From positions 142,245-206,244 of the IMG/VR virus record IMGVR_UViG_3300026484_000087: a stretch of DNA of 64,000 nucleotides. The stretch is one strand, 5' to 3'. The translations under genes and the position numbers were made by a program. The first letter of the stretch is position 1. Each line of letters starts with the position of its first letter. A model generated the notes under the pieces. It was not told the origin of the DNA. It ran no database searches and was given only the letters and a program-made list of their open reading frames with translations. Below are positions 12,777 to 53,535 of the stretch, one piece after another.

Positions 12777-12801
12777 TTAGAGGCAATACCTCTAACTACT
12801 T
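12771..12801. terminator. Bidirectional terminator-like hairpin
   Basis: AAGTAGTTAGAGG-CAATA-CCTCTAACTACTT between convergent genes. Confidence 0.75.
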
Positions 12802-13612
12802 ATTTGTATGCCTCTAATCTGCTCTTTATTCTGGCATATGCTATTTTGGTATCGTTGTTTGGATCTGATGTAGTGCCATTAGGTGTTATATAAACCGATT
12901 CGTCCAAAACTTTTAATAGATCGGTTAATACCGACAATAGGTTTTCTGTACCATTATTGATGTTAAAATGTGAAGCGTTCAGTGTTACTGAGTTGCTTGC
13001 TGTCATTGTAAGATCACTAGCTTCTAAATTAAATGACTTAGTTTTCAACTTTATATCGTTATTAAATACCATACTAAGTAATTCAGCAGCACTGTCAAAC
13101 CCAATTTTATTACCTTTATCATCAAATATTTCAAATAGACCTACTTTAGTATCTATTTTCATATCCCATGTAGTTTCTTCTCCATCATTCTTGGCAGTAT
13201 GTAAGCTTACCAACTTTTCAATATTGTCAAATAGCATACTATATGAATTATCATTGGTTAATTCTTTTGCTTCATCGTCATTACTAAATCTAAAATAATG
13301 AGTACCTTTTGTATGTATCGCAGATTTATCTAATGTGCTAAATACAAAGAACCAATAATAAACACCAGTATCTCGATGTCTAAATATAATTACCTCTTTA
13401 CCAGCATTTAACGGTGGTACCTCATCATGAATATTCTCTAATAAACCCAGCCATGTAGCGTTTAGATTTTGTGGCGGTGCTTCATCTGCAGGAAAGAATA
13501 TCTTTATGTCTTCGTTGTCTATTCTAATACATTTTACCGTATCGTTTCCAACAGAAGTATCTTCAGTAAGTCTGTATAATCCTATAGTCTTTAATCTAGT
13601 TAACGGTTTCAT
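12800..13612 (-). CDS. Baseplate spike-like protein, paralog 1
   Basis: Shares (S/T)LHT..NDGE.TT.D..I.TK.G...I.D.KGN...FDS with the next gene. It has beta-helix-like repeats and a PNGTTSDP...IKSRLE terminus. Confidence 0.6.
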   Translation of the reverse strand: MKPLTRLKTIGLYRLTEDTSVGNDTVKCIRIDNEDIKIFFPADEAPPQNLNATWLGLLENIHDEVPPLNAGKEVIIFRHRDTGVYYWFFVFSTLDKSAIHTKGTHYFRFSNDDEAKELTNDNSYSMLFDNIEKLVSLHTAKNDGEETTWDMKIDTKVGLFEIFDDKGNKIGFDSAAELLSMVFNNDIKLKTKSFNLEASDLTMTASNSVTLNASHFNINNGTENLLSVLTDLLKVLDESVYITPNGTTSDPNNDTKIAYARIKSRLEAYK

Positions 13613-13621
13613 TTATTCTCC

Positions 13622-14485
13622 TTATCCACATTTAGGTGGTGATGTATCTATTCCTAAGTTACCACAATGTACGTGAGTTTTATCAATACAGATATCGTCA
13701 TGGGTAATTGTACCACCAAGATATTTAACGCTACCAATGTTATGAGTATTATCGCTACTCGTAGTAGTCCATTTATTTGCGTTCATTGTTAGGTTTGGTG
13801 TAGTTATTGTCATTTTGTTTGTAGCATTATATTCTATGATTTTAGTATTGAATACTATTTTATCAATTATGTTAGCAGTGAGAGTATTTATAGAACTATC
13901 AAATAATAATTCATTGCCTTTACCATCTATAATCGAAATAACGCCCTTTTTAGTATTTATCATAATATCATATGTCGTATGTTCTCCATCGTTATCTGAT
14001 GTATGTATACTTACTTCTTTATTAATTGTATCTACTTTAGTCCAATAGGTATTATCATCATGTAGATTTTCCATGAAAACATCTGTATTACTATAATAAT
14101 GTATTACCTTCTCTTTTCTTCTAAGATCAAATTCATTATACATTGTCATCCAATAAAATTCATCTTCATTGGCATATCTAAATAACATTACTTGTTCACC
14201 TTTTTTAACCATAGGTGCAGTTTTACGGTTACTGTGTCCAAGTGCTAACCATTTAGCTTTTATAGTAACGCTTTTATTTAAAACTATTACTTCGGCTTCA
14301 TTATCTATATCTTCGTTAGATACAGTTATGCCTTCTACATAAGCTATATCGCCATCAACATGTGTCATGTTTTCTATTGGAAAACATTCTACAATAAAAC
14401 CATCTTCCTCAATATCCTTGGCTACTATAGCCACTGAGTACATGTGAAATCTACTAATATCATTAAGACGATTATTATTATTCAT
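13622..14485 (-). CDS. Baseplate central spike (gpV/gp138-like), paralog 2 with HxH metal-binding tip
   Basis: OB-fold-like N-terminus (AKWL...APMVKKGEQVMLFRY), beta-helix repeats and C-terminal KTHVH...TSPP typical of spike apex domains. Confidence 0.7.
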   Translation of the reverse strand: MNNNNRLNDISRFHMYSVAIVAKDIEEDGFIVECFPIENMTHVDGDIAYVEGITVSNEDIDNEAEVIVLNKSVTIKAKWLALGHSNRKTAPMVKKGEQVMLFRYANEDEFYWMTMYNEFDLRRKEKVIHYYSNTDVFMENLHDDNTYWTKVDTINKEVSIHTSDNDGEHTTYDIMINTKKGVISIIDGKGNELLFDSSINTLTANIIDKIVFNTKIIEYNATNKMTITTPNLTMNANKWTTTSSDNTHNIGSVKYLGGTITHDDICIDKTHVHCGNLGIDTSPPKCG

Positions 14486-14503: not shown

Positions 14504-14530
14504 CTTTAATCAGATAAATGTTATGGGTAA
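14504..14530 (-). promoter_or_regulatory. Class II promoter-like motif TTACCCATAACA-N6-TG
   Basis: 27 bp identical to 21819-21845, lying between a palindrome and the spike-gene RBS. Confidence 0.65.
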
Positions 14531-14551
14531 GAAAAAGAAATAGACTTTATC

Positions 14552-14581
14552 TTACATATGATACCATGGTATCATATGTAA
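14552..14581. terminator. 30-bp perfect palindrome
   Basis: TTACATATGATACCATGGTATCATATGTAA, just past the 14594 stop. Confidence 0.7.
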
Positions 14582-14593
14582 ATATTATTTAAA

Positions 14594-15889
14594 TTATAAT
14601 AAAAGATTAATAATATATGAGTACTCTTCCACTAAGTTATCAAAATTGTTTTCACTAATCAATATTGAACTATAAGTACTGGTACCAAAAGTGGGAAGTT
14701 TATAAGCAATATATTCGCCATCATCAATACCTATACTAAAAATACTTTCACCGAGTAAATTCATTTTGATTTTTGCTTTAACTCTAACATAATTGTTATT
14801 AGTTATACTTGGTATAATAATAGATTTAAGCATTAATAATAACTCATCTACATGATATAAATCACCAAAGAAACCTTTTATGTTATTAAGCGTTATAGCA
14901 TGGTCTCTAGTATCAAAATCAATATCTAATGATCTAATCGATGTCTCAAACATTAAACTTTGTAACGTTTCATTTAAGGCATATGCTATTTTACTATTTT
15001 TACTACCATCTTTTAAAGTTGAGAAGGAACCATGAAATAATGGAGCAACATCAATTATTTCAACTATATCTTTAATATCAGTGTTTATGTTATTTAGTAA
15101 ATCTAAAGTTAATGTGTTTACTATTATTGTTCCACTTAATATGCCTAAGGTATTTAGAAAATGATTTTCAAAGATCTGTCCCTCTACTAAACTACATATA
15201 GCTGTATTTAAATTATCTATTGAACCCATACTTATTTTATTCATTTCATAATCAAGTATAATGGCATTTAATAACTCAGACGTACTGTGTGATAATATGT
15301 TATTCCTAAATTTAGAATTTATTGGAATAATGCTAGAATCGTTTCTTATATCGGTATAGTCTGCAGTAAATGTGTTTTTAGCATTTATAGCTCTTATGAT
15401 ATCTTCTGGTCTACATGTTTTTAATTTTGTTTCTTTATCTGAACTACTTATTATCTGATAATTCTTCATATTGCGAACATGTGTGGGTTCTTTAAAATTA
15501 TCTACAGTATACTCTGCCACGCTATTTATGTATAGTAATGTTCTATCATTTATTGTGTTGTCATCAGTAAACCCTAATACTATTGTAACTATGTTAATAC
15601 CATTGTGCGAATGTTCAGTTTTAATCATAAAGCTGTAACGTTCACTTTCCCAGCCATTGTCAATGACTGCATCTCTAGTCTCTTCAGAATACCTAAGTAC
15701 ATCAGGGTTTATTTTACTTACGCAAAATGGTTCAACCAGTGTACCTTTATTTATAATTGTATCTATTTTGTCTATGTTTTCATATGATATATTTCCTACT
15801 ACATCCCTACTACATATGTCACTGTAACTGTTCATCTTAAAGAATTTTATTTCCTTTATTATAGGACTATTTTCTGGAATTTTAAACAT
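14594..15889 (-). CDS. Putative nvRNAP promoter-specificity subunit (phiKZ gp68-like), 431 aa
   Basis: Likely start is ATG 15889 after AAGGAG (the track's 16183 extension overlaps sbcC). Motifs NGWESERYSF, LGFTD, LYINSV and RPEDI resemble gp68-family proteins as I recall them. Confidence 0.55.
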   Translation of the reverse strand: MFKIPENSPIIKEIKFFKMNSYSDICSRDVVGNISYENIDKIDTIINKGTLVEPFCVSKINPDVLRYSEETRDAVIDNGWESERYSFMIKTEHSHNGINIVTIVLGFTDDNTINDRTLLYINSVAEYTVDNFKEPTHVRNMKNYQIISSSDKETKLKTCRPEDIIRAINAKNTFTADYTDIRNDSSIIPINSKFRNNILSHSTSELLNAIILDYEMNKISMGSIDNLNTAICSLVEGQIFENHFLNTLGILSGTIIVNTLTLDLLNNINTDIKDIVEIIDVAPLFHGSFSTLKDGSKNSKIAYALNETLQSLMFETSIRSLDIDFDTRDHAITLNNIKGFFGDLYHVDELLLMLKSIIIPSITNNNYVRVKAKIKMNLLGESIFSIGIDDGEYIAYKLPTFGTSTYSSILISENNFDNLVEEYSYIINLLL

Positions 15890-15944
15890 TATGTACTCCT
15901 TATTGTTAGAGGTATCATCTAGGATACTTAACCGACATAACTTT

Positions 15945-15976
15945 GATACTGCCACGTATCTACATATATTATATAT
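15945..15976 (-). promoter_or_regulatory. Class I promoter-like ATATATAAT plus GATAC-GTGGCA-GTATC leader hairpin
   Basis: One of four copies with identical 7-nt spacing. Confidence 0.7.
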
Positions 15977-16052
15977 GGTTGAAAATAAGTGGAAAGTTAG
16001 ATGTATAATTATTAAACGCAATATAAATAATTGAATAATTAAAGGATATGAT

Positions 16053-18503
16053 ATGTATATAGAAAATTTAACACTTAGCAGATATAAAAGATTATTTTTG
16101 GCATATATAAATAAATTGGAATATACCCCAGAAAAAAGAATAAATATAATTGTTGGTAAAAATGGATCTGGTAAGTCCTCCACTTTAAAAGAACTTACTC
16201 CGTTGCCAGCTAATTTAACTAAAGACTATGATGAAGATGGTTATAAAAAAATAACTATAAAACATAAGGGTAGTAAATATGTGTTGACTTCTGGCATAGT
16301 AGGTAAGAATAAACATAGTTTCATGGTAGATAATGAAGAGCTTAATCCAGCTGGTACAAGAAAAGTACAACTTATGTTAGTTAAAGAACACTTTAATTTA
16401 ACACAAGATATACACGATACTCTTATAGGACTAAAGAACTTTACATCTATGTCAACCGTAGAAAGAAAAAATTGGTTTACAAATATATCAACAGTAGACT
16501 ACACTTATGCTATAGGCGTATATAATAAGATAAAGCAAAGACATAGGGATATAGTGGGAGCATTAAAGATATCTCAAACAGAATTAACCAAAGGTAGCGA
16601 TAGTATTAAAACCGAAGAGGAAATAAATTCTATAAAGGGTGAAATAAAAATACTTAAAGAGATATTGGATCTGGCTATGTCTTCTAAAGAACAATTTAGA
16701 TCACCAGTAGATATTGATGAAACCAAACTTATGATGCTTGTTGATATGGGTTATAAAGTATTGTCAGAACTCAATAAACCAGATCTAGATGTAGATATAG
16801 ATGTTGCTATTGGATCTATTAGTAATGAAATTACTCTTTTAAAGAATGAGATAGAAAAACAAAATAAAATATTGAAAGATCTAATGTTTATGGAAGATAC
16901 TAAAGATAGTTCTGATGCCAAACTTATAGATGAAACAATACTTGAGTTGCAAAAAAAGATAAGTACACTAGAAGATTCATTTATAGTGAAAATACCAAGA
17001 GATGATCTTCCTGAATTTATAAACTCTTTTAATTATAGATATCAAGACATCATAGTTATATTAAATGAAATTTCTATTAGGAATGATGCTGATTATGATA
17101 TAGACCTATATAAAAAGAATTTAACAGATATTGATGTTATAAATGCAAATATAAATACATTTGTAAATCTTAGAGAGACTTTATTTAAAACGAAGGATTC
17201 TATGGAACATAATAGAGATCATAATGAAGTTGAATGTGTTAAGTGTGGTAATATTTGGTCTATAGGTTATGACGAAAAAGAGTATAAGATAGTTATTGAT
17301 AAGATAGATAAATTAAGTGTTAAAATAGAGAAACTTAAAAAAAGACTTGATGAACTTAATGAAGTAGTAAGTACTTTTAAAGAGAAAATAACCTATACTA
17401 AACAGTTGTTATCTATTAAAGACAATGAAACTAATTTATACAATAAACAGGTTTTAGAACATGTTCTTGATAAATACAATGTTCTTACCGAAAGCAAAGC
17501 TATTATAGACTATATGTATAAAGTTAAGAATAATGTAGCAGAGCTTGAAAAGATACCTATTTATGTAAAAGAATATGAAATGCATCTTAAAGATAAAGAG
17601 ATATTAGAAGTAAAACGTAAAATGGAGGTTGAATACTTCAATACTAATAAGGATAACATAGAAGAAGAGTTAAGTAACAACAAGGTCAGATTAAAAGAAC
17701 TTGATAATAAGTTAAACTCTGTTAAATCCTATAAATCCAATTTATCTATACTTACAAAGATATCTGATACTCTTATAGATAGTATTAAGAAATTGAACTC
17801 TAATAAACAAGTAGAGATATCTATGGCCAGAAATAATAGTCTTAACGAATCCATTAAAGTTATAAATCTTGAGATAAGTAAATTAGAATCTATAATATCA
17901 GATTCTTTATATAACTCTAAACTTATAGAGAATAACAAAGAGAAAGTTATAGAGTTGGATAAAAGAAAGAAAGCCACCGCTTTATTATTGGAAGTAATGT
18001 CTCCTAATAACGGTTTAATAGCTAAATCGATAACACAATTTCTTGATATGTTCATAAACGATATGAATTCTATAATAAATAAGGTATGGAATTATAGTAT
18101 AGATGTTCTTCCTTGTAAGATAGATGATGGAGTTGATTTAGATTATAAGTTTGAGGTTAGGGTAGATGGTAGAAACGTTATGGAGGATGTTAGTAAGACT
18201 AGTTCATCTATGAAGGAGATAATTAATTTAGCTTTTAAAATAGTGAGTATGAAATATCTTAATATGGAAGATTATCCATTATACTTAGATGAGTATGCTG
18301 CATCATTTGACGCACATCATGCTATAAAAGCATATGACGGTATAGAGACGTTAGCTTCATCCAGCTTTAATCAAATTTTCATGATATCGCATTATGAAAG
18401 TACATACACCAGGTTCAGTGATTGTGATATATCTGTATTAGATGCAGAGAATATATTGCTTAATGGAGATATGGAAATAAATAGAGTATTAAAACTTAGT
18501 TAG
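16053..18503 (+). CDS. sbcC: SbcC/Rad50-like SMC ATPase
   Basis: Walker A GKNGSGKS, coiled coils, zinc-hook CVKC, signature-like SSSM and Walker B LYLDE. Confidence 0.9.
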   Translation: MYIENLTLSRYKRLFLAYINKLEYTPEKRINIIVGKNGSGKSSTLKELTPLPANLTKDYDEDGYKKITIKHKGSKYVLTSGIVGKNKHSFMVDNEELNPAGTRKVQLMLVKEHFNLTQDIHDTLIGLKNFTSMSTVERKNWFTNISTVDYTYAIGVYNKIKQRHRDIVGALKISQTELTKGSDSIKTEEEINSIKGEIKILKEILDLAMSSKEQFRSPVDIDETKLMMLVDMGYKVLSELNKPDLDVDIDVAIGSISNEITLLKNEIEKQNKILKDLMFMEDTKDSSDAKLIDETILELQKKISTLEDSFIVKIPRDDLPEFINSFNYRYQDIIVILNEISIRNDADYDIDLYKKNLTDIDVINANINTFVNLRETLFKTKDSMEHNRDHNEVECVKCGNIWSIGYDEKEYKIVIDKIDKLSVKIEKLKKRLDELNEVVSTFKEKITYTKQLLSIKDNETNLYNKQVLEHVLDKYNVLTESKAIIDYMYKVKNNVAELEKIPIYVKEYEMHLKDKEILEVKRKMEVEYFNTNKDNIEEELSNNKVRLKELDNKLNSVKSYKSNLSILTKISDTLIDSIKKLNSNKQVEISMARNNSLNESIKVINLEISKLESIISDSLYNSKLIENNKEKVIELDKRKKATALLLEVMSPNNGLIAKSITQFLDMFINDMNSIINKVWNYSIDVLPCKIDDGVDLDYKFEVRVDGRNVMEDVSKTSSSMKEIINLAFKIVSMKYLNMEDYPLYLDEYAASFDAHHAIKAYDGIETLASSSFNQIFMISHYESTYTRFSDCDISVLDAENILLNGDMEINRVLKLS

Positions 18504-18526
18504 TATAACCATATGGTTATACTAAC
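18499..18526. terminator. 28-bp perfect palindrome
   Basis: GTTAGTATAACCATATGGTTATACTAAC between convergent genes. Confidence 0.75.
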
Positions 18527-19136
18527 AGTTACATTTTATTTTTTTTATATAAGATTCTAGGTTTCTTATATGGGTATCTTTTTTATCTAATAGCGTTAAT
18601 GTTTCTTGGTATCTAGTTCTAAAACTTTTCTTAACAGATGATTTGTTCTCTCTAAGTAATTCCATTTGCTTACTTGTAGTATCATCTAACAATACTTTAG
18701 CAGAGGTAGGGATCTCTTTTAAGGCAGCTTCTACTCCGAGATTGTCGTATATAACATTAATCAAATCATCTTTCAACGTTGTAAGATCTAAATCCAATGG
18801 TAATAAGCCTAATGAAATAGCCAGCATCCTTTCTTGATGTTGTTTACCAACTATAACAGGTATACTTAATATTTTATTAGCTGGTACATAAAGATATTCG
18901 TTACCAGTACTTAATAGAACTACTATAGGTACTTTATTTTCAAGATCTCTTGCTAGGTCTTCTTCAGTAAGACCTACTGGTTTATAGATATTGTCAAGAG
19001 GTTTATCTGTAGCAAGTTCATCTAGACTACGTATAGCTGTAACAAGGTATTCTTCTAAACTACTTAATACATTATCAAATGGGGCTGCTAACACAAACTT
19101 ACCTTTTGAATTTATTGGTGGTACTGTATATTCCAT
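18522..19136 (-). CDS. Conserved phiKZ-like hypothetical protein
   Basis: 204 aa, AAAGGA RBS and a class II motif upstream. The N-terminal PPINSKGKF.L..PF motif is recalled from jumbo phages. Confidence 0.65.
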   Translation of the reverse strand: MEYTVPPINSKGKFVLAAPFDNVLSSLEEYLVTAIRSLDELATDKPLDNIYKPVGLTEEDLARDLENKVPIVVLLSTGNEYLYVPANKILSIPVIVGKQHQERMLAISLGLLPLDLDLTTLKDDLINVIYDNLGVEAALKEIPTSAKVLLDDTTSKQMELLRENKSSVKKSFRTRYQETLTLLDKKDTHIRNLESYIKKIKCNC

Positions 19137-19153
19137 TATTATTCCTTTATTTA

Positions 19154-19179
19154 TTTAATCAATAAAATGTTATGGGTAA
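19154..19179 (-). promoter_or_regulatory. Class II promoter-like motif
   Basis: Minus strand reads TTACCCATAACA-TTTTAT-TGATTAAA. Confidence 0.6.
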
Positions 19180-19206
19180 TAATTGAAAAAAAAAATAAAC
19201 ATGATA

Positions 19207-19491
19207 TTAGATATCATGCTCATCCAGATCAACTGACAGTCTGATCTTATTTGGTGTCATAGACACAACTTTAATGTTGAATTTTGTGTAGATATTAACA
19301 AGATCATTGAAATTATCAATAATATCAGTATAACAAAATCCACCACATACTAGTTCATCGAACTCTCCAGAGCTTGAAGCTATTGGAAATGTTCTTTCCA
19401 ACAACTCTTTATGTACTGTATCAAATCTTACGATAACTACCATAGTTCTTGGATCTATATTTTCTAGTTGTTCTTCAGTTAGTTTTTTCAT
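19207..19491 (-). CDS. Hypothetical protein
   Basis: 94-aa ORF with an AGGAG RBS, coupled to the upstream gene. Confidence 0.65.
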   Translation of the reverse strand: MKKLTEEQLENIDPRTMVVIVRFDTVHKELLERTFPIASSSGEFDELVCGGFCYTDIIDNFNDLVNIYTKFNIKVVSMTPNKIRLSVDLDEHDI

Positions 19492-19873
19492 TGTCTTCTC
19501 CTATTTCCTTAATATAGTCTTTGAATCTATTTAGCTCATTAAGACTCATATTACATTCGAACTCTTCAGTCCATTCTAATGTACAAAGCTCAGCGATGCT
19601 TTTACCAGCATCTTTATAATCCTGAACAGTTCCAGGACTAACTTGATCTTTTAATACATCAACCACTATTTTGTTATTATCATTGTATTCAACAACAACT
19701 CTAACTGTTCCTACGTATATAAGATCTACTTCTCTTTTATTGTCTTGTCTTATTCTACTAGCGAAAGCCATACTATCTTTTGGATAGTTTCCTCTATTGT
19801 CAAAGTTTCTTGTTAGAGGACTAACCCCAGTAGTAGTAAAATTATTAGAAAAGTTTTGTGGATTAAATGACAT
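19475..19873 (-). CDS. Hypothetical protein
   Basis: 132-aa ORF with an AAGGAG RBS and a class I motif at 19991-19999. Confidence 0.7.
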   Translation of the reverse strand: MSFNPQNFSNNFTTTGVSPLTRNFDNRGNYPKDSMAFASRIRQDNKREVDLIYVGTVRVVVEYNDNNKIVVDVLKDQVSPGTVQDYKDAGKSIAELCTLEWTEEFECNMSLNELNRFKDYIKEIGEDNEKTN

Positions 19874-20078
19874 AATGTCTCCTTCCGTAATAGACCATTG
19901 ATTATAGGTTCTAACTTTTGTTAGATTATTTTAAATTACCCATAATAAAAGAATCATTAGCTATTTGATTCTTCCCCTATTACTACTTTTATTATATATG
20001 GTTGAAATATATTCGAAACTCAATTTTAACAGTTTTTATAGACTAAGTAATTTTATGATAAAATATAAGGAAATTAAT

Positions 20079-21518
20079 ATGTTAGATAATGAAAAACAAT
20101 ATGCTGCTTGTGTGTATACTGATGGTAGTGCTAATAATATGTTGAAGATATGGGGATGGGGTTCTCACGGTTATATATATGACATTAATGAAAAGCCTAA
20201 GGTTACTAAAAATAAGCCAGTTAATATGGTAGTTACTGACATAGGATATTTAGAACCAGGAGAGTTGAAGATCAAACCAAATGAATTAGTTAATCCAGTA
20301 GTTTATTTAGATTGGTATGGATCTTACCGTAGAGCTGGTACAAATAATGTTGGAGAATTATTAGCTATAATAGAAACAGTAAAAAAATTACTAGAACATA
20401 ATGTTACTAAGATAACTTTATTCTCAGATTCTACATATGCTATTGGTGTATTTAAATCTAGCAAAACTAAAACAAAAGAATCTATAATTAAAAACGTAGA
20501 AGCTAATCAGGACTTATGGTTACTTGCTAAAGATATAAATGATACTGTAGAAAAAAGTAATATAGAGTTAACTATAGAAAAGATAAAAGCACATAATGGA
20601 CATCTTGGTAATCATACGGCAGATGATATGGCTATGCTTGGTAGATACAATTCTACTAAAATAATGAATGATGAAGAGATTGATTTTACATTAAGGGAAC
20701 CACAAGGTTATTGGAAGCCTAAAAATGAAAGACATCCTTTCTTAACAGCTAAACAAATATTCTTTACCAATAACGATAAGAATCCAAATGAGTATTCTTT
20801 ATTAGGTTATAAGGAAGAAAACGAGATAGGTAAAAAAATGCATATAGCCAACTTTGGTTTAGTTGTTTTAAAAGATAAAGATGAGACTATAGACCTTATT
20901 AAGAATACATATAATGAGTTACTGGGAGAACACTCAGTAGTGTCTACTGTTAGAATGGATCTTTTATTTAAACCAGATAACTTTAAATATGTAGAAAGAT
21001 ATGGTAAGAAATGTTTAATGCCTTTAAATAAAAATAGAAGGGGTATAAGTATACTAGAAAAAGAAATAGTGGCTAACTCTATAAATCCTCCAGCGTTAGC
21101 TTATACAGCCTTAAATAACCTAGACAACCTAAGAGTTGTATTAAATGATTTTAACGCTCTGAAGGCAGATAAAGGCTATATAACAGGCAAAGAATTTATT
21201 GACATTACAGATATGTATTATACTACTAATGATAAAGGTAAAAATGTATTTAGACAGGAATTAGGTAATGATATTAAAAGTTTAAAATATGTCTATGAAG
21301 TAGATGATAAAAAAGCAGATCTTATAATTCAATTTGGTAAAGACATACTTGCTAGAAATCCTATGAAGAAACTAGAAAAATTAGAACCTAAAGTATATTT
21401 AGTTATAGTAAATAGTAACAATGTAAAGTTGGACTATTATACCATAGTTGATATAGAAAGTACAGGCGATCAATCTGTATGGAGTAATTTTTATGCAAAG
21501 ACAGTTTTTATAAAGTAA
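20079..21518 (+). CDS. rnhA: RNase HI-like nuclease with C-terminal extension (phiKZ gp155-like)
   Basis: YTDGS, TNNVGELLA, SDSTY and KIKAHNGHLGNHTADDMA motifs. ATG 20079 follows AAGGA. Confidence 0.85.
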   Translation: MLDNEKQYAACVYTDGSANNMLKIWGWGSHGYIYDINEKPKVTKNKPVNMVVTDIGYLEPGELKIKPNELVNPVVYLDWYGSYRRAGTNNVGELLAIIETVKKLLEHNVTKITLFSDSTYAIGVFKSSKTKTKESIIKNVEANQDLWLLAKDINDTVEKSNIELTIEKIKAHNGHLGNHTADDMAMLGRYNSTKIMNDEEIDFTLREPQGYWKPKNERHPFLTAKQIFFTNNDKNPNEYSLLGYKEENEIGKKMHIANFGLVVLKDKDETIDLIKNTYNELLGEHSVVSTVRMDLLFKPDNFKYVERYGKKCLMPLNKNRRGISILEKEIVANSINPPALAYTALNNLDNLRVVLNDFNALKADKGYITGKEFIDITDMYYTTNDKGKNVFRQELGNDIKSLKYVYEVDDKKADLIIQFGKDILARNPMKKLEKLEPKVYLVIVNSNNVKLDYYTIVDIESTGDQSVWSNFYAKTVFIK

Positions 21519-21547
21519 GAGTAGTATAGCATATGCTATACTACTCT
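21518..21547. terminator. 30-bp perfect palindrome
   Basis: AGAGTAGTATAGCATATGCTATACTACTCT between convergent genes. Confidence 0.75.
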
Positions 21548-21808
21548 ATACCTCATATTTAACATATGAATGTTATCTGCTATATTTTTAAAAAGATTAA
21601 ATTCTCTTGGATCTTTTTTACGATTAACTAAATTTTTTCTATAACCTTCATAATTCAGTTTTATTAAATGTTTGGCATAAGAATCAATATCTTTAAAATC
21701 TATAATGTTATAGTTTAAGTTATATAATTCAACAATGTCTAATAATAAATTATCTAGATCATCCTTAGTGAATGTTATTTCACCAAATTCAATTTTATCT
21801 GTTGTCAT
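21536..21808 (-). CDS. Hypothetical protein
   Basis: 90 aa, AAAGGAG RBS and a class II motif upstream. Confidence 0.7.
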   Translation of the reverse strand: MTTDKIEFGEITFTKDDLDNLLLDIVELYNLNYNIIDFKDIDSYAKHLIKLNYEGYRKNLVNRKKDPREFNLFKNIADNIHMLNMRYRVV

Positions 21809-21818
21809 ATTTTCTCTC

Positions 21819-21845
21819 CTTTAATCAGATAAATGTTATGGGTAA
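21819..21845 (-). promoter_or_regulatory. Class II promoter-like motif
   Basis: 27-bp exact copy of 14504-14530. Confidence 0.65.
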
Positions 21846-21878
21846 AAAAATAAATAGAGTAGAAACTACTCTATCTTA

Positions 21879-22475
21879 CTATCTAAGGTACTTGAACCAA
21901 AGATAGTAGTCATACATATTTTGTATAACGTTTAATATTAACATAACCATGGTAAATTGTATAATATCTATATGTAGAACTGATATAGATACTACTGCTA
22001 TACCTGAACCAATAGCTCCACCAATAGTTATAGTTAAGTCAGCTGCTTTTCTAATTAACTTAAGTGCTTTGTTTCCAGAATCTGTATTAAATTCTTTTTG
22101 CTCATAGGCTCTAGATGTTTCCCCAGTTATTTTTCTAATAATAGCAGATCCTATAATAACGCCATATACGATATAACCAGCAGTGGCTAAATCACTCGTA
22201 TATATAAGACTTATATATAATGCTATTAAGAAGATGGTTTCCTGTGTTATAGATGCTAACTGTCCACCTTTTAATGTAACCCAATTAGTATGGGCTACTT
22301 TGATTCCTACTAGAGCAGTTATAAATATAAGCATCTCAAAGATAGGTATCACATCATTACCCATTGCATTCTTAGCCATAATCATGAATGTAGTTAAAGC
22401 CATCCATGTTGTAGTTCCTAATAAATCACTTAGTATCATTGCTCTTGACCATTTTATATAATTTGTTCTTTTCAT
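21879..22475 (-). CDS. Polytopic inner-membrane protein
   Basis: 198 aa with about 5-6 hydrophobic segments. AAGGAG RBS, a class I motif at 22497-22505 and a hairpin at 21854-21874 downstream. Confidence 0.7.
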   Translation of the reverse strand: MKRTNYIKWSRAMILSDLLGTTTWMALTTFMIMAKNAMGNDVIPIFEMLIFITALVGIKVAHTNWVTLKGGQLASITQETIFLIALYISLIYTSDLATAGYIVYGVIIGSAIIRKITGETSRAYEQKEFNTDSGNKALKLIRKAADLTITIGGAIGSGIAVVSISVLHIDIIQFTMVMLILNVIQNMYDYYLWFKYLR

Positions 22476-22554
22476 TATGTTCTCCTTAAATTACCCATAA
22501 TATATTTTGTTACTTAAAACTAAAAAATAACAGATACCAAATTGGTACCTATTA

Positions 22555-22806
22555 TTAAAGATACTTAGACAATCTGTCTAACTCTTTTCTATATGACTCG
22601 ATCTTAGCTGCTTTCTCTCTAGCGTCTTCAATAACCCTTTCCATATTTATGCCAACTATATGTTTGGCTGACAATAATGATTGAGTATTTATTGAAAATA
22701 TCTCAAACATATATTCACTATTTATCCTAGAATAAATTCTAGAATATACATATTTGCGTCTATCTTTTTTATTTAATCTAACTCTTTTATTTAATTTAAG
22801 CATCAT
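22555..22806 (-). CDS. Hypothetical basic protein
   Basis: 83 aa, ATGA overlap with the upstream gene. Confidence 0.6.
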   Translation of the reverse strand: MMLKLNKRVRLNKKDRRKYVYSRIYSRINSEYMFEIFSINTQSLLSAKHIVGINMERVIEDAREKAAKIESYRKELDRLSKYL

Positions 22807-23018
22807 AATACCTCATTAGCTTTTACAATACACTCGATATTATTTCTAATATCAGTTGCTTGTATTGGTTCATCTTCATAGTTGAATACTATTTCACCAA
22901 TATTAAAACCCATACCGTTAAAATGCGTGCTAGCCATTCTAGCATGATCAGTTAATAGCGTTAATGTTTCTAGATTAAACACTGTATCTTCTTCCACGTC
23001 CATTCTGATATTATACAT
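22803..23018 (-). CDS. Hypothetical acidic protein
   Basis: 71 aa, TAATG overlap. Confidence 0.6.
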   Translation of the reverse strand: MYNIRMDVEEDTVFNLETLTLLTDHARMASTHFNGMGFNIGEIVFNYEDEPIQATDIRNNIECIVKANEVL

Positions 23019-23200
23019 TATCTTTCCTCCACTTTAACTATAATGTTACTGCATTCGGTATTTGACCATATTGTAACTGAACCATTCTTTACTTCCCAAC
23101 AATGACCTGTTCTTGTTTTACTTAAAGGCATTATTTCATATGCCCAACCATTACAAACCTCTACCATTTTCTCACATCCGTCTACTGTTATAACTTGCAT
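23018..23200 (-). CDS. Hypothetical protein
   Basis: 60 aa, AAGGA RBS. Confidence 0.6.
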   Translation of the reverse strand: MQVITVDGCEKMVEVCNGWAYEIMPLSKTRTGHCWEVKNGSVTIWSNTECSNIIVKVEER

Positions 23201-23233
23201 TTTAGTTCCTTATTTATTTTTTAATAATTACCA

Positions 23234-23323
23234 TTAATTGATATAGGAAATTATTTCTTTTAGAATATCTTTTAATAAAGATATCAACACAGTTCTTAAA
23301 AGAGATATTAAAAACTTTCTCAT
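23234..23323 (-). CDS. Unannotated 29-aa amphipathic/hydrophobic peptide
   Basis: MRKFLISLLRTVLISLLKDILKEIISYIN with an AGGA RBS 6 nt upstream. It is below the ORF-track cutoff. Confidence 0.5.
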   Translation of the reverse strand: MRKFLISLLRTVLISLLKDILKEIISYIN

Positions 23324-23343
23324 GTGGATTCCTAGTCAAATTT

Positions 23344-23374
23344 TACAGTATGGTACCGTCAGTACCATACTGTA
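23344..23374. other. 13-bp-stem hairpin within a structured leader
   Basis: TACAGTATGGTAC-CGTCA-GTACCATACTGTA. Confidence 0.75.
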
Positions 23375-23565
23375 GTCATTTGTTTATTTCTAGTTAATCC
23401 ATCGAACTAAATCGATCCACCATATTAAATGGTCCATTCACTAACGATACGTATACCGTAAATGATGGTTCACAGTAATTACAACTGCAAACTCTAATTA
23501 TATTATATATGGTTGAAAAAAAATGGAAACTCAACTTAGAGCATTTAATGCTCTAAGTTGTTAAA

Positions 23566-24231
23566 TTACCTTTTTTTCTCTGTACCAGATAACAAAGCCA
23601 CAGAATTAAATTTAAAATCCAATAAAAGTTTATCTTGTCTATGGTAGTAGTATTCTGTTTTCTTAACAGCTAATATGTTACTTTCACGACTAAAATGATC
23701 TTCATTGAAATCTACACCTAGATACTCTGCTCGATTTTTCTCAACTTCCATGTTTAAGAAATATATTTTTCTATAGATTTCGTACCTAGTCAATTTTGGT
23801 TGTTTATAGTAGATGCTGTTTGATTTAGATCTGGTCCATATAATATCCATTTCATTGTTGGTTTTTATACTTGGGTAGATATCTACGAACCTTTCAGCCA
23901 ATTTACCAAAATTATCTAAATGAATCTCTGGCATATCTATATAGAATCTACAGTTATTCTCTAGAATAAAACTATTTATTATCTTAACTATGTCATCTTT
24001 TGATCTGGCTTCAAGCACAGTATAATTTACATTTTTAAGCTTACCAAATGTTCTTATATCATCAGCTTTGGCACATGCTTGCTTTATGGCTTCTGCTGTT
24101 TCCTCACATGTTATGAAGATGGAGTTATAACTTGTACCACTGGTTTGTTCTGTTATAAATAACCTAATAAGCTCGGTTGTTTTACCGCTTCTTGCTTTAC
24201 CTACTATACATTTTATTTTATTCTTTTCCAT
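23566..24231 (-). CDS. RecA/KaiC-like P-loop ATPase-domain protein
   Basis: Walker A GKARSGKT, FITCEET strand motif and a possible Walker B FYID. Confidence 0.55.
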   Translation of the reverse strand: MEKNKIKCIVGKARSGKTTELIRLFITEQTSGTSYNSIFITCEETAEAIKQACAKADDIRTFGKLKNVNYTVLEARSKDDIVKIINSFILENNCRFYIDMPEIHLDNFGKLAERFVDIYPSIKTNNEMDIIWTRSKSNSIYYKQPKLTRYEIYRKIYFLNMEVEKNRAEYLGVDFNEDHFSRESNILAVKKTEYYYHRQDKLLLDFKFNSVALLSGTEKKR

Positions 24232-24249
24232 AGTATTTCCTTTTATATT

Positions 24250-24843
24250 TTAAATTTCTACCATTAATGCTTTATCTGTATCTTTAAAATACACTTCAGC
24301 TCCATTAAACCACTTATCTATTAGATCTATTTCTTCACATATATCATCATATGTTAATATAAGATCTTTATCACTAAACATATTAGTTTTATATAGCCCA
24401 ATATCATTCATGAAGAATGTATCACCTCTAGCGTTAATAACCTTAGCATAGATTTTATCATTCTTTCTAAGGTAAGACTCTGAATAATAATAGATTCCAT
24501 AGATGTTAAATTCATTTACATTTCTGGTTTGAGGTTTAACCTTAATGTATATGTTATCAAAACTGGTTTTAGTAATGGATGCTATGCTACATTTAACTTT
24601 AGCCAAATTACTACCACCACTACCTATGACATGTTTTATTTCAATAGTAGGTACATAAATAGTAAAATTCAACTTAGGTCTGCCAATAAACTTTGTTGGT
24701 AAAAATACATAACCATCAAATTGTGCCAAATGTACTTTAAATGCTCTAAGTTCCTTTTCAGCCAACTCAAGGTTTCTATCCTCATGGACAGGATACGAAT
24801 TAAACATTCGTATATCGTCTTTATCTTTTAAAATGTTGGACAT
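24250..24843 (-). CDS. KH-domain (GxxG) putative RNA-binding protein
   Basis: IKHVIGSGGSNLAKVK matches the KH helix-GxxG-helix motif. Confidence 0.6.
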   Translation of the reverse strand: MSNILKDKDDIRMFNSYPVHEDRNLELAEKELRAFKVHLAQFDGYVFLPTKFIGRPKLNFTIYVPTIEIKHVIGSGGSNLAKVKCSIASITKTSFDNIYIKVKPQTRNVNEFNIYGIYYYSESYLRKNDKIYAKVINARGDTFFMNDIGLYKTNMFSDKDLILTYDDICEEIDLIDKWFNGAEVYFKDTDKALMVEI

Positions 24844-25247
24844 TATAAGTACTCCATCTTTGTATTTTCAGATATAGTTATGCCTTTATGCTCATATATG
24901 TTTTCTAATGTATCTGTAAAATCTGTATCAATATATGCTAAGTTATCGATATGCGATTCCTTAAGTTCAGCAACAACATCTGCATCTAGAACGATGATCT
25001 TTTTATCCTCATCAACTTTATATGTAATATCATGGTTCTTAAAGTATTTAATAAACCATACAAATATACTTTCACTTTCTTTAACATAAAGTTCGCCTAA
25101 TTCATTCTCTATTTCTTCTAATCGCTCATCGATATCATCAAGTCCATTTACATGACTCTCATCTATGTCTAAACCTTTACATCTGATAACTTCAGCTTGT
25201 GCAAGTAACTCTTCTTCTTCTTTTCTTAAACTTTCTATTCTAGTCAT
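24843..25247 (-). CDS. Hypothetical acidic protein
   Basis: 134 aa, AAGGAG RBS, downstream of a class I motif plus hairpin. Confidence 0.7.
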   Translation of the reverse strand: MTRIESLRKEEEELLAQAEVIRCKGLDIDESHVNGLDDIDERLEEIENELGELYVKESESIFVWFIKYFKNHDITYKVDEDKKIIVLDADVVAELKESHIDNLAYIDTDFTDTLENIYEHKGITISENTKMEYL

Positions 25248-25271
25248 AACGACTCCTTTATATTTATATCT

Positions 25272-25303
25272 GATACTGCCATGTATCTATATTAATAATA
25301 TAT
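25272..25303 (-). promoter_or_regulatory. Class I promoter-like ATATATTAT plus GATAC-ATGGCA-GTATC hairpin
   Basis: Copy 2 of 4. Confidence 0.7.
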
Positions 25304-25320
25304 AAGTAAAAAAAATTAGA

Positions 25321-25352
25321 TAACTACTTAGGACATATGTCCTAAGTAGTTA
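25321..25352. terminator. 32-bp perfect palindrome
   Basis: TAACTACTTAGGACATATGTCCTAAGTAGTTA at the stop of the HNH-fusion gene. Confidence 0.75.
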
Positions 25353-26831
25353 CATCTTAACGATTTTTATAAGGTTATTAACCATGCCTATTTGATGGTT
25401 TATTAAACTATAATTAGTCATTGCTATAGATATCAAACTAGCATTATTATCTAGACCAGTAGATAATGCATGTAATGTAGATTTAGTTATTTCAAACTTA
25501 TTATCTTTACTAACAATATGTTCATGTAGCATATTAGTTTTTTCAGCTATCTCTTTAACTAAGCTATCTATTTTACTAAAATTAACCTTACCAAGTTTAT
25601 TTCCTAGAATGGCAGTATCTTCAGCAAGCTTAGGCAATGAAGTTAAATTTGGTACAAGTTTACCAACTGGCATTCTATCGTTGTTAGAGTTAACATCTAT
25701 AACCCCAGATAGATTATTTTTTATCTCATAAGCAACTTCTTCGGTTTTTTCAAAAAGTGTTTTCTTAGGTTTAAAAGATTTTCTGTAATCTTCATCAGAC
25801 ATTATCTTACTTAAGATGACATTTAACTCACTAAGAGAATCTATAATTAAAGAACCTAACATATGTTCATTTTTACTAAGTTTATTTTCAAGTTCTATTA
25901 GGTTAGTGTTTAAACCAATAACGACTGGGGTTTCTCTAGATTCTATACTAGCATAACTTTTATTCTTAATAATTCTCTTAAGAGAACTAATATCACTTCT
26001 AAGTTGTCTAAGTTCTTTATTGCTTTCACCAGATATACCACTTATGGTTTCTGTAACACCAGAGAATAATTCGCTAATAGAATTTAATCTATTTAAAACA
26101 AAGTTATTTATATTACTAATTAAACCATTTTCATTACTAAGCATATTAACCGCTTCATCTACTGATTCAAAACTAAGAGTTTCTTCTAACGTTACTAACT
26201 GATTAACTTTTTCCATATTCTTTTTCCTTTTATCCCATACATCTTGTATGTTCTGTGATTGACTACCCCATTTAAGATTGGTAGCATTACAATTCTCTTT
26301 ATTATCGTCCTTATGCATAACGACAAAACCTTTTGGACCAACTCCATGAAATGCAGTACAAACCAATATATGTACATACTCCATTTTACTTTTGGTGCTA
26401 CCATCTTTAAAAATAGATACTTTAAGATAGTGTCCAGCACTAACACCTTTAGTAAAATTACCTGTTTTCAATGTAAGTATTTCTCCAAGGTTACTCGCCA
26501 GATACTTACTAAATCCAGGTATAGGTTTCCATATTCTATCCATAGCATTTAATGGGACAGGTATCCTATTTGATACATCTACATTAACTGGCAACTCAAT
26601 TGGTATTATGTTTTTATGTATATAAGGAGCTTCCTCATCTACATATAGGCCATCATCTGATAGACTAAATACTTTATAGTACCATCCATCAAGTTTTCTA
26701 TGTTTTTTCTTAATAGCTTTAACAAGGTCTTTTAATGTCTTATACATTTTTATATAACCAGTGCTATTTACCTTAATTTCTATTTTTTTATTAAGTATAT
26801 CTGTTTTATAAATTGGTAAATATAATACCAC
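25350..26831 (-). CDS. NUMOD4-HNH endonuclease fused in frame to a putative head protein
   Basis: GTG start after AAGGAG. NUMOD4 WKPIPGFSKYLASNLG and HNH VHILVCTAF...HKDDNKENCNATNLKW. An internal AAAGGA RBS plus ATG at 26216 opens a 288-aa helical domain with S-x-E motifs. Confidence 0.75.
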   Translation of the reverse strand: MVLYLPIYKTDILNKKIEIKVNSTGYIKMYKTLKDLVKAIKKKHRKLDGWYYKVFSLSDDGLYVDEEAPYIHKNIIPIELPVNVDVSNRIPVPLNAMDRIWKPIPGFSKYLASNLGEILTLKTGNFTKGVSAGHYLKVSIFKDGSTKSKMEYVHILVCTAFHGVGPKGFVVMHKDDNKENCNATNLKWGSQSQNIQDVWDKRKKNMEKVNQLVTLEETLSFESVDEAVNMLSNENGLISNINNFVLNRLNSISELFSGVTETISGISGESNKELRQLRSDISSLKRIIKNKSYASIESRETPVVIGLNTNLIELENKLSKNEHMLGSLIIDSLSELNVILSKIMSDEDYRKSFKPKKTLFEKTEEVAYEIKNNLSGVIDVNSNNDRMPVGKLVPNLTSLPKLAEDTAILGNKLGKVNFSKIDSLVKEIAEKTNMLHEHIVSKDNKFEITKSTLHALSTGLDNNASLISIAMTNYSLINHQIGMVNNLIKIVKM

Positions 26832-26854
26832 TAATTACTCCTTATAATACATTA

Positions 26855-26878
26855 TTTCATATAAATGTTAGGTGGTAA
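26855..26878 (-). promoter_or_regulatory. Class II promoter-like variant
   Basis: Minus strand reads TTACCACCTAACA-TTTATA-TG. Confidence 0.55.
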
Positions 26879-26895
26879 AAGAAAAATACCATTAG

Positions 26896-26921
26896 GTTAG
26901 ATGTGCCATGGCACATCTAAC
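26896..26921. terminator. 26-bp perfect palindrome
   Basis: GTTAGATGTGCCATGGCACATCTAAC. Confidence 0.7.
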
Positions 26922-33088: not shown

Positions 33089-33120
33089 GATACTGCCTAG
33101 TATCTATTTTAATAATATAT
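33089..33120 (-). promoter_or_regulatory. Class I promoter-like ATATATTAT plus GATAC-TAGGCA-GTATC hairpin
   Basis: Copy 3 of 4. Confidence 0.7.
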
Positions 33121-47152: not shown

Positions 47153-47183
47153 GATACTGCCTGTATCTAAGTTAATAATATAT
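47153..47183 (-). promoter_or_regulatory. Class I promoter-like ATATATTAT plus GATAC-AGGCA-GTATC hairpin
   Basis: Copy 4 of 4. Confidence 0.7.
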
Positions 47184-47204: not shown

Positions 47205-47230
47205 GATAACCTAGATTAATCTAGGTTATC
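47205..47230. terminator. 26-bp perfect palindrome
   Basis: GATAACCTAGATTAATCTAGGTTATC over the stop of the RNAP-subunit gene. Confidence 0.7.
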
Positions 47231-53403: not shown

Positions 53404-53442
53404 TTAACAACCAATAGCGATTAACCATAACCACTTTTTCAT
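53404..53442 (-). CDS. Possible 12-aa micro-ORF MKKWLWLIAIGC
   Basis: Strong AAAGGAG RBS 5-6 nt before the ATG. Confidence 0.35.
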   Translation of the reverse strand: MKKWLWLIAIGC

Positions 53443-53535
53443 GTATGCTCCTTTAATAAAAATATTTATATCATTAAAAATGATTTTTAGCAATGATTAA
53501 TATTAATGATATAAATAAATTATAAGGAACTATAG

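What the first reader, a model, noticed from the sequence alone, without database searches (positions are those of the whole stretch)
14504..26878. Class II motif TTACCCATAACA-N6-TG resembles the AR9 late-promoter consensus
Seen: four copies upstream of minus-strand genes (14504-14530 and 21819-21845 identical over 27 bp; 19154-19179; variant 26855-26878), all with AACA-N6-TG and usually just after a hairpin. Established (recalled): Bacillus phage AR9 nvRNAP recognises AACA-N6-TA/G through template-strand uracils, whereas phiKZ late promoters are TATG. Inference: these are nvRNAP promoters with an extended upstream element. It raises, but does not show, the possibility of uracil-containing or otherwise modified DNA in this very AT-rich genome.
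Basis: partly seen in the sequence, partly recalled or inferred. Interest (0 to 1): 0.62.

Follow-up and report, generated by a model that had tools for sequence, protein, structure and literature searches.

The report
Extended promoter motif in vent jumbo phage
A 12-base word followed six bases later by TG recurs in front of genes of an uncultivated hydrothermal-vent jumbo phage and is most likely a stronger, extended version of the promoter that the phage's own RNA polymerase uses for its non-early genes; it copies the AR9 pattern in spacing, but the genome shows no sign of the uracil DNA that AR9 needs.

Summary
TTACCCATAACA-N6-TG occurs exactly at window 14511-14530, 19160-19179 and 21826-21845 (minus strand), with a variant at 26858-26878. 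A fourth exact copy and further variants lie elsewhere in the 206-kb contig.

All copies sit in intergenic DNA, point toward the downstream gene, and place the G 18-27 nt before the start codon. Seven of eight follow a strong hairpin and T-run.

The genome is a distant phiKZ-like (chimallin-encoding) phage from a vent metagenome. It has a full phiKZ-type non-virion RNA polymerase.

The motif's 3' half belongs to a genome-wide element: T-6 T-5 WWW T-1 G+1 A+2, with weak C-9 A-8. This element lies 22-28 nt before the start codon of 44 of 111 operon-first genes, including DNA polymerase, helicase, virion RNA polymerase and structural genes. A separate AT-rich Class I motif precedes the polymerase-subunit and chimallin genes and marks early promoters.

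AACA at -11..-8 is spacing-specific but rare (7-8 sites). The 12-mer is conserved only in close relatives.

ThyX and dCMP deaminase argue against uracil DNA. No RNA data exist, so the start site is inferred.

Verdict: probable phage-polymerase promoters, a new variant of a known kind.

The parts
14504..14530 (-). Class II copy 1: TTACCCATAACA-TTTATC-TG-ATTAAAG. Predicted +1 is the G at 14511, 26 nt before the ATG at 14485.
   Evidence: conserved upstream of the orthologous gene in relatives G001/L115 and L122
14552..14581 (-). Palindromic hairpin followed by a T-rich run, directly upstream of copy 1 (terminator-like)
   Evidence: MFE -16.8
12800..14485 (-). Two paralogous baseplate-like genes (13622-14485 and 12800-13612) downstream of copy 1
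   Evidence: phrog_3216, E 6e-51 and 1e-22; a PAAR-motif gene follows in relative L122
19154..19179 (-). Class II copy 2. Predicted +1 is the G at 19160, 24 nt before the ATG at 19136.
   Evidence: identical in L122; replaced by a plain TTTATTGATTA element in G001
19200..19218 (-). Hairpin core followed by a T-run, upstream of copy 2
   Evidence: MFE -13.6
18522..19136 (-). DUF7194 gene, homolog of phiKZ gp161 (baseplate horn protein)
   Evidence: gp161 role from PMC13250141
21819..21845 (-). Class II copy 3, 27 nt identical to copy 1. Predicted +1 is the G at 21826, 18 nt before the ATG at 21808.
   Evidence: a related copy (ACCCATAACA-N6-TA) sits at the same place after the 198-aa gene in L115
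21852..21876 (-). Terminator-like hairpin whose T-tail runs into copy 3
21536..21808 (-). 90-aa gene of unknown function downstream of copy 3
   Evidence: no family hit
26858..26878 (-). Variant copy TTACCACCTAACA-TTTATA-TG. Predicted +1 is the G at 26858, 27 nt before the GTG at 26831.
26896..26921 (-). Palindromic hairpin upstream of the variant copy
   Evidence: MFE -19.8
25350..26831 (-). Free-standing HNH endonuclease (HNH_3 + NUMOD4) downstream of the variant copy
47216..48910 (-). Homolog of phiKZ gp123, the beta-like polymerase subunit whose pocket binds T-3..G+1 in phiKZ. It is the likely reader of the shared T-1 G+1 element.
   Evidence: 24% identity; F151, K158, H331, S334, Q466 conserved; H185 to Y; PMC12809450

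Best explanation
The Class II elements are compact terminator-promoter junctions. After the hairpin and T-run that end the upstream transcript, the phage's own non-virion RNA polymerase (nvRNAP) re-initiates at or within a base or two of the G of TG. This gives a 5' leader of about 18-27 nt ahead of the Shine-Dalgarno sequence.

The polymerase is phiKZ-type, with homologs of gp55, gp68, gp71, gp73, gp74 and gp123.

The initiator part (T-6 T-5 WWW T-1 G+1 A+2) is shared with about 50 other non-early promoters of the genome. [quoted passage not shown]

Class II adds an extended upstream element, TTACCCAT at -19..-12 plus AACA at -11..-8. This region is where, in phiKZ, the sigma-like gp68 and gp71-73 hold the duplex and begin strand separation. 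The element therefore most likely makes a stronger or more autonomous promoter for insulated, mostly single-gene units.

Shown here: the motif, its position, orientation, spacing specificity, hairpin association and conservation; the polymerase gene set; the early class. Inferred: that it is a promoter, which polymerase uses it, the start site, and which subunit reads which part.
For: - Motif statistics and spacing.
- Shared initiator: the G of WTGAW lies 22-28 nt before the start codon in 44 of 111 genes with an upstream gap of at least 35 nt, against about 1 per position elsewhere and no peak for genes inside operons (P=6e-21).
- Position-specific composition against intergenic control TGA sites: T-6 81% vs 27%, T-5 83% vs 40%, C-9 33% vs 8%, T-21 81% vs 44%.
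- The same element is seen in relative G001 and in more distant AT-rich relatives L117, L123 and L125.
- The TG element precedes DNA polymerase, DnaB, UvsX-like, virion-polymerase subunits and virion proteins. Class I, not Class II, precedes the nvRNAP subunits and chimallin.
- The 12-mer is conserved at orthologous sites in relatives with 50-88% protein identity, although the flanking hairpins differ.
- It is not palindromic, which fits asymmetric recognition by a polymerase.
- Published frameworks: phiKZ T-3ATG+1 and AR9 A-11ACA-N6-T-A/G+1; phiKZ gp68 deforms -11..-8 and contacts -13/-14, -18/-19 and -22/-23.
- The nvRNAP gene set and its synteny with phiKZ gp68-75.
Against: - There are no transcript data, so the start site and promoter activity are inferred only.
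- In G001 the orthologous DUF7194 promoter lacks the 12-mer and keeps only the TG element. Relatives with 49-53% protein identity lack it altogether. The extension is therefore dispensable.
- Most AACA sites belong to one sequence family, so shared descent inflates the count. Counted as independent events there are about 3 (P=0.003).
- Three TTACCCATAA copies (window 19936 +, window 22491 +, genome 82945 -) have no TG at N6 and are not placed before a start codon.
- The downstream genes are functionally mixed.
Confidence: 0.6

Rival explanations
1. The 12-mer is an operator or recruitment site for a separate phage-encoded factor, laid over an ordinary TG promoter. Such a factor could define a middle class, which purified phiKZ nvRNAP cannot transcribe alone. 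The 12-mer would then set the timing of a small regulon.
For: - The extension is present at only 5-8 of about 52 TG promoters.
- It is dispensable in orthologs.
- TTACCCATAA also occurs in other orientations and positions in intergenic DNA.
- phiKZ middle promoters need something beyond the purified polymerase (PMC7598289).
Against: - The word has no dyad or direct-repeat symmetry.
- AACA sits at exactly the AR9 -11..-8 register relative to TG, which suggests polymerase contact.
- No candidate factor was identified.
- The downstream genes do not form a coherent functional set.
Confidence: 0.2
2. This is an AR9-type uracil-dependent promoter. The genome carries dU in place of dT, and the sigma-like subunit reads template-strand UUGU at -11..-8.
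For: - Same pattern and spacing as the AR9 consensus.
- Very AT-rich genome, 29.8% GC.
- No dUTPase, ThyA or dCTP deaminase was found in the 77%-complete contig.
Against: - ThyX (90 bits, above the cut-off) and a dCMP deaminase lie in one cluster at genome 21848-23977. Uracil-DNA jumbo phages lack TS/ThyX (PMC7824862).
- Chimallin is present, whereas the review describes the uracil phages as not encoding a pseudo-nucleus.
- The sigma-like subunit matches phiKZ gp68 (E 4e-17) and shows no match to AR9 gp226 at E<=1.
- The gp55 homolog matches phiKZ at 8e-66 and AR9 at 6e-18.
- AACA is a minority feature.
Confidence: 0.04
3. The element acts at the RNA or termination level. It could be a downstream part of the intrinsic terminator, or a processing or stability site in read-through transcripts, rather than a promoter.
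For: 7 of 8 sites abut a hairpin plus T-run.
Against: - Most terminator-like hairpins in the region lack it.
- Its 3' half is shared with about 45 sites, two thirds of which have no strong hairpin.
- Its distance is fixed to the downstream start codon, not to the hairpin.
Confidence: 0.08
4. TG plus the A-rich downstream stretch is an extended -10 element (TGnTAtaAT) for the host sigma-70 polymerase.
For: TGATWAAA loosely resembles TGnTATAAT. AT-rich vent hosts such as Campylobacterota use extended -10 promoters (my own knowledge, not tested here).
Against: - Positions +3..+8 carry at most 0.28 bit each, and the key -7 T equivalent is T in only 17 of 52 sites.
- A start about 7 nt after such a hexamer would fall on or after the Shine-Dalgarno sequence.
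- Sigma-70-like sites are not enriched, 111 against 100 +/- 12.
- phiKZ-like phages transcribe independently of the host polymerase.
Confidence: 0.04

Closest known systems
AR9 (Bacillus jumbo phage) late promoters, A-11ACA-(6N)-T-1 A/G+1, read by the nvRNAP through gp226
   Same: - The AACA tetranucleotide.
- The exact 6-nt spacer.
- T then purine at the predicted start.
- Location shortly upstream of genes.
- A separate AT-rich early class (ATATATTAT-6N) that is almost the same as AR9's AAATATATATTAT-(6N)-G.
   Different: - AACA is found at only 7-8 sites rather than about 80% of non-early promoters.
- There is an added TTACCCAT at -19..-12.
- The genome encodes ThyX, dCMP deaminase and chimallin.
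- The sigma-like subunit is gp68-type.
phiKZ late promoters, T-3ATG+1, read by gp123 in the non-template strand
   Same: - A phiKZ-type five-subunit polymerase with gp68-75 synteny.
- T-1 G+1 at the predicted start.
- The G+1-stacking Phe and several pocket residues of gp123 are conserved.
   Different: - Positions -3 and -2 are only A/T, not strictly TA.
- There is clear upstream information (T-6 T-5, C-9 A-8, a T-run near -21, and the 12-mer), whereas phiKZ shows none.
- A+2 and an A-rich leader follow the start.
phiKZ / 201phi2-1 middle promoters (weak AT-rich motif near -24; not transcribed by purified nvRNAP)
   Same: A T-rich tract at -24..-18. Mixed structural and non-structural downstream genes, as reported for 201phi2-1.
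   Different: Here the T-run is largely the tail of an upstream terminator. No temporal data exist.

Membership tests
AR9-type nvRNAP late promoter | AACA at -11..-8, a 6-nt spacer, then T and a purine | tested here: met
   7 sites at N6 against 0-2 at other spacings; alignment A1
AR9-type nvRNAP late promoter | It is the consensus of most non-early promoters (94 of 118 in AR9) | tested here: not met
   7-8 of about 52 TG-type sites
AR9-type nvRNAP late promoter | Uracil-containing template strand | tested here: not met
   Indirect test: ThyX and dCMP deaminase are present. The criterion comes from PMC7824862. DNA chemistry itself could not be tested.
AR9-type nvRNAP late promoter | gp226-type specificity subunit | tested here: not met
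   The 516-aa subunit matches phiKZ gp68 (E 4e-17) and gives no AR9 chain at E<=1
AR9-type nvRNAP late promoter | Transcription starts at the final purine | not testable with these tools
   No RNA run holds the sequence
phiKZ-type nvRNAP late promoter | A five-subunit non-virion polymerase is encoded | tested here: met
   Homologs of gp55, gp68, gp71, gp73, gp74 and gp123
phiKZ-type nvRNAP late promoter | TATG overlapping the start, with all four bases required | tested here: inconclusive
   T-1 G+1 was the selection anchor. Position -3 is A in 33 and T in 15 of 52; position -2 is A in 31 and T in 19 of 52. Only a minority of sites read TATG.
phiKZ-type nvRNAP late promoter | No conserved sequence upstream of -3 | tested here: not met
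   T-6, T-5, C-9, A-8, T-21 and the 12-mer carry information
Jumbo-phage vRNAP early promoter | An extended, highly conserved AT-rich block about 6 nt before the start, upstream of early genes | tested here: not met
   Class II lacks the block. Class I carries it and precedes the nvRNAP and chimallin genes.
Host sigma-70 extended -10 promoter | TGn followed by a conserved TAtaAT, at a workable distance from the RBS | tested here: not met
   Low information at +3..+8; the geometry clashes with the RBS; no enrichment

The most novel reading that the evidence does not exclude
The extended element is read by the phiKZ-type polymerase itself as a two-part promoter. The gp68-like sigma subunit would recognise -19..-8 (including AACA at the AR9 register) in ordinary thymine DNA, and the gp123-like subunit would recognise T-1 G+1.

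This would mean that the AR9 -11..-8 element is an older, general feature of jumbo-phage non-virion polymerases and not a uracil-specific invention. It would also supply the 'unknown sequence determinants' of strand opening that the phiKZ structures left open.
Probability: 0.25. Interest if true: 0.7.

Novelty: new variant of a known kind. Interest (0 to 1): 0.45.

Why it matters
The published view is that middle and late promoters of RNA-polymerase-encoding jumbo phages cannot be predicted from sequence (PMC7598289). It also holds that phiKZ-type promoters carry only four informative bases, which leaves their specificity unexplained (PMC12809450).

This AT-rich vent phage clade shows a readable non-early promoter signal. 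One sub-class combines the AR9 upstream register with the phiKZ start-site dinucleotide, in a genome that looks thymine-based.

If confirmed, this gives a natural set of strong and weak promoter variants for testing which subunit reads which bases. It would also provide a bioinformatic handle for operon annotation in uncultivated chimalliviruses.

Tried and rejected
- Near-identity search of 'phages' with 8 kb of the window found nothing.
- Scanning IMG/VR for the exact motif gave 97 loci. Nearly all are single chance hits inside genes; only L029 (= G001) was a true relative.
- Single-protein locus searches found no relative or only G001.
- My first EM motif runs converged on the Shine-Dalgarno sequence and Class I. 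They worked only after the region next to the start codon was masked.
- The genome search could not reach the ENA record behind L115, so conservation of the copies at genome 20.1, 26.8 and 35.4 kb was not tested.
- No RNA run holds the sequence. I did not use read laying, because DNA contigs cannot show a start site.
- No tRNA gene or Rfam family lies in the window.
- The ORFs next to the gp68 homolog are gp69/gp70 homologs, not polymerase subunits. L001:4127-5653 is an XPB-like helicase (gp75 homolog), not gp123.
- I considered and rejected three readings: a host sigma-70 extended -10, a duplicated neutral cassette (the flanking hairpins differ between copies), and WTG as a real start codon (a Shine-Dalgarno sequence and ATG follow at the proper distance).
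- Only genetic code 11 was used.
Full report
**The observation**

The pattern TTACCCATAACA-N6-TG has three exact minus-strand copies in the window, at 14511-14530, 19160-19179 and 21826-21845. At up to two mismatches there are five hits against 0.84 expected, and none of 100 shuffles reached five.

- 14504-14530 and 21819-21845 are identical over 27 nt.
- 19154-19179 shares the 12-mer and TG.
- 26858-26878 is a variant with TTACCACCTAACA.

Each copy lies in intergenic DNA on the sense strand of the gene downstream. The G of TG sits 18-27 nt before the start codon.

The window is the last 64 kb of a single 206,244-bp contig of 29.8% GC. In the whole contig:
- The 12-mer occurs six times against about 0.05 expected.
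- A fourth promoter-like exact copy lies at genome 26.76 kb.
- Variants lie at about 20.13 kb (AATA instead of AACA), 35.37 kb and 93.12 kb.

**What the genome is**

The contig is an IMG/VR virus record, 77% complete by CheckV. Its only full holder among sequencing runs is a hydrothermal-vent metagenome, and no RNA run holds it.

Its proteins match phiKZ-like jumbo phages at only 25-35% identity. It encodes:
- chimallin;
- a phiKZ-type major head protein;
- virion-polymerase subunits;
- a complete non-virion polymerase set.

The non-virion polymerase homologs are:

| phiKZ subunit | E-value |
|---|---|
| gp74 | 5e-50 |
| gp55 | 8e-66 (against 6e-18 for the AR9 chain) |
| gp68 | 4e-17 (no AR9 gp226 match at E<=1) |
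| gp71 and gp73 | see call |
| gp123 (window 47216-48910) | see call |

Genome 4.1-19.4 kb is syntenic with phiKZ gp68-gp75. The transcription machinery is therefore phiKZ-type, not AR9-type.

**Three kinds of upstream signal**

I called 224 genes and examined the 111 that have at least 35 nt of upstream intergenic DNA.

*Class I.* The consensus is ATATATTAT-TAAAGTAG-GATAC-N6-GTATC-GAATAAA. There are about 16 strict copies and about 10 variants. Four lie in the window, at 15956-15975, 25283-25302, 33100-33119 and 47163-47182. Class I precedes the gp74, gp55 and gp68 homologs and chimallin. It closely matches the AR9 early consensus AAATATATATTAT-(6N)-G. It is the virion-polymerase early promoter.

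*A general element.* The G of WTGAW falls 22-28 nt before the start codon in 44 of the 111 regions. The background is about one hit per position elsewhere, and genes inside operons show no peak (P=6e-21).

I aligned 52 such sites, 49 of which had a single candidate, and compared them with TGA sites elsewhere in intergenic DNA:

| Position | At promoter-like sites | At control TGA sites |
|---|---|---|
| T-6 | 81% | 27% |
| T-5 | 83% | 40% |
| C-9 | 33% | 8% |
| A-8 | 62% | 45% |
| T-21 | 81% | 44% |

There is also almost no G or C at -3 and -2 (4 of 52 and 2 of 52 sites), and the leader is A-rich.

This element precedes DNA polymerase, DnaB helicase, a UvsX-like recombinase, virion-polymerase subunits and virion proteins. 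It also precedes a conserved mini-ORF at the head of the capsid operon. The same positional signal appears in the 110-kb relative G001 and in the more distant AT-rich relatives L117, L123 and L125.

*Class II.* Class II is the subset of the general element that carries TTACCCAT at -19..-12 and AACA at -11..-8.

**How the AR9 resemblance fares**

- AR9 late promoters are A-11ACA-(6N)-T-A/G+1.
- They are read on the template strand, with obligatory uracils at -11 and -10.
- phiKZ late promoters are T-3ATG+1.

Here AACA-N6-TG is spacing-specific: 7 sites at N6 against 0-2 at any other spacing, and the dinucleotide CA gives 16 against 1-13. It is also rare, at 7-8 of about 52 TG-type sites. Five of those sites belong to one sequence family.

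Counted as three independent events the enrichment is still significant (P=0.003). A weak C-9 A-8 preference also survives removal of the AACA sites (9 of 44 C, P=0.03).

The -11..-8 register is therefore real, but it is not the main determinant in this phage.

**Conservation**

G001 (IMGVR_UViG_3300026484_000105) is syntenic with genome 93-198 kb at 50-87% protein identity.
- Upstream of the baseplate-like gene it keeps TTACCCATAACATTT...TG exactly.
- After the 198-aa gene it keeps ACCCATAACA-N6-TA.
- Upstream of the DUF7194 gene it has only TTTATTGATTA, without the 12-mer.

The closer relative L122 (88% identity) keeps both copies, one of them with a single substitution.

Relatives at 49-53% identity (L117, L123, L124, L125) have only the plain TG element at the same place.

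The initiator is therefore clade-wide. The 12-mer is a lineage-specific and dispensable addition.

**Context**

Seven of eight AACA-type sites follow a strong hairpin and a T-run, against 15 of 46 other TG sites (P=0.006). The hairpin sequences differ between copies, so the copies are not duplicates of one cassette. Terminator-like sites are enriched in the region and sigma-70-like sites are not.

The downstream units are short and mostly monocistronic:
- two baseplate-like paralogs;
- the homolog of the phiKZ baseplate horn gp161;
- a 90-aa unknown;
- an HNH endonuclease;
- outside the window, an SbcD-like nuclease, thioredoxin and unknowns.

The motif is thus partly, but not specifically, associated with late structural genes.

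**Mechanism proposed**

In phiKZ, gp123 binds T-3..G+1 of the non-template strand. Separately, gp68 bends the duplex from -11 to -8 and contacts the backbone near -13/-14, -18/-19 and -22/-23. Opening is 'supported by unknown sequence determinants'.

In this phage's gp123 homolog, several pocket residues are conserved:
- Phe151, which stacks on G+1;
- Lys158, His331, Ser334 and Gln466.

His185 is Tyr, and the Tyr399/Tyr406 region is uncertain. The alignment is at only 24% identity, so this is weak evidence. It fits a fixed T-1 G+1 with relaxed -3 and -2.

I therefore read Class II as a non-virion-polymerase promoter. Its start-site element would be read as in phiKZ. Its -19..-8 extension lies where the sigma-like subunit holds and opens the DNA. 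The whole would give strong re-initiation directly after a terminator. This is inference; nothing here shows transcription.

**Uracil**

The contig encodes a ThyX (genome 21848-22717; 90 bits against a cut-off of 24.8). A dCMP deaminase lies 0.6 kb away (23339-23977). Together they form the ordinary route to dTMP.

Comparative work lists the absence of thymidylate synthase or ThyX, and of dUTPase, as the requirement for uracil genomes. The uracil jumbo phages are also described as lacking a pseudo-nucleus, and chimallin is present here.

No dUTPase, ThyA or dCTP deaminase was found. Because the contig is incomplete, these absences say little.

Uracil DNA is unlikely. A thymine-derived modification cannot be excluded.

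**Verdict**

- The promoter reading is probable but unproven.
- The AR9 likeness is one of pattern and register, not of family membership.
- The uracil suggestion is disfavoured.

The wider and more useful result is that this phage clade has a sequence-readable non-early promoter signal, of which Class II is the extended form.

Noticed in passing
window 15956-15975, 25283-25302, 33100-33119, 47163-47182 (all minus strand); about 20 more copies in the contig: Class I motif: ATATATTAT, then about 8 nt, then a conserved hairpin GATAC-N6-GTATC and GAATAAA. It precedes the non-virion polymerase subunits and chimallin. It is probably the virion-polymerase early promoter, with a conserved 5'-leader hairpin of unknown role.
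   Followed up: partly
window 15965-16000 (+), 23499-23535 (+); genome 52301, 86546: A conserved block TATATTATATATGGTTGAAAA(A)AATGGAAAC flanks some Class I variants on the opposite strand. This suggests divergent or two-faced early promoter regions.
   Followed up: no
L002:1848-3977 (genome 21848-23977): ThyX and dCMP deaminase sit in one cluster, indicating a phage-encoded dTMP supply for a 30% GC genome.
   Followed up: yes
L001:10912-11265 (-): A weak group I intron match (RF00028, 25 bits, E 5e-4, below the gathering score) lies between the gp71 and gp73 homologs. This is the same place where phiKZ carries gp72.
   Followed up: partly
L001:4127-5653 (-): An XPB/RAD25-like SF2 helicase (homolog of phiKZ gp75) lies directly downstream of the polymerase beta-prime subunit gene, in the same early operon.
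   Followed up: partly
window 53404-53442 (-): A 12-codon ORF (MKKWLWLIAIGC) has its own RBS and TG-type promoter (G at 53472) and heads the operon that contains the major head protein. It is conserved in G001.
   Followed up: partly
L007:17939-18481 (-): An early (Class I) gene has a sub-threshold nucleoside 2-deoxyribosyltransferase-like match (27.2 bits, cut-off 28.8). It is 82% identical in G001 and is possibly nucleotide-pool editing.
   Followed up: no
window 39019-39038 (+); genome 58479 (-): Two copies of TTACCCATAACA lie inside genes on the antisense strand. The one at genome 58479 has TA at N6 and could be an antisense promoter, as described for AR9.
   Followed up: no
window 19936-19945 (+), 22491-22500 (+); genome 82945 (-): These TTACCCATAA copies lack TG at N6 and are not placed before a start codon. 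The one at 22491 overlaps an early-like TATATTAT on the other strand and is conserved in G001.
   Followed up: partly
window 1-7620 (+), continuing upstream to genome 140934: A 2976-aa ORF whose ortholog in relative L115 carries a phage lysozyme domain. It is probably a virion-associated lysin or tail protein.
   Followed up: no
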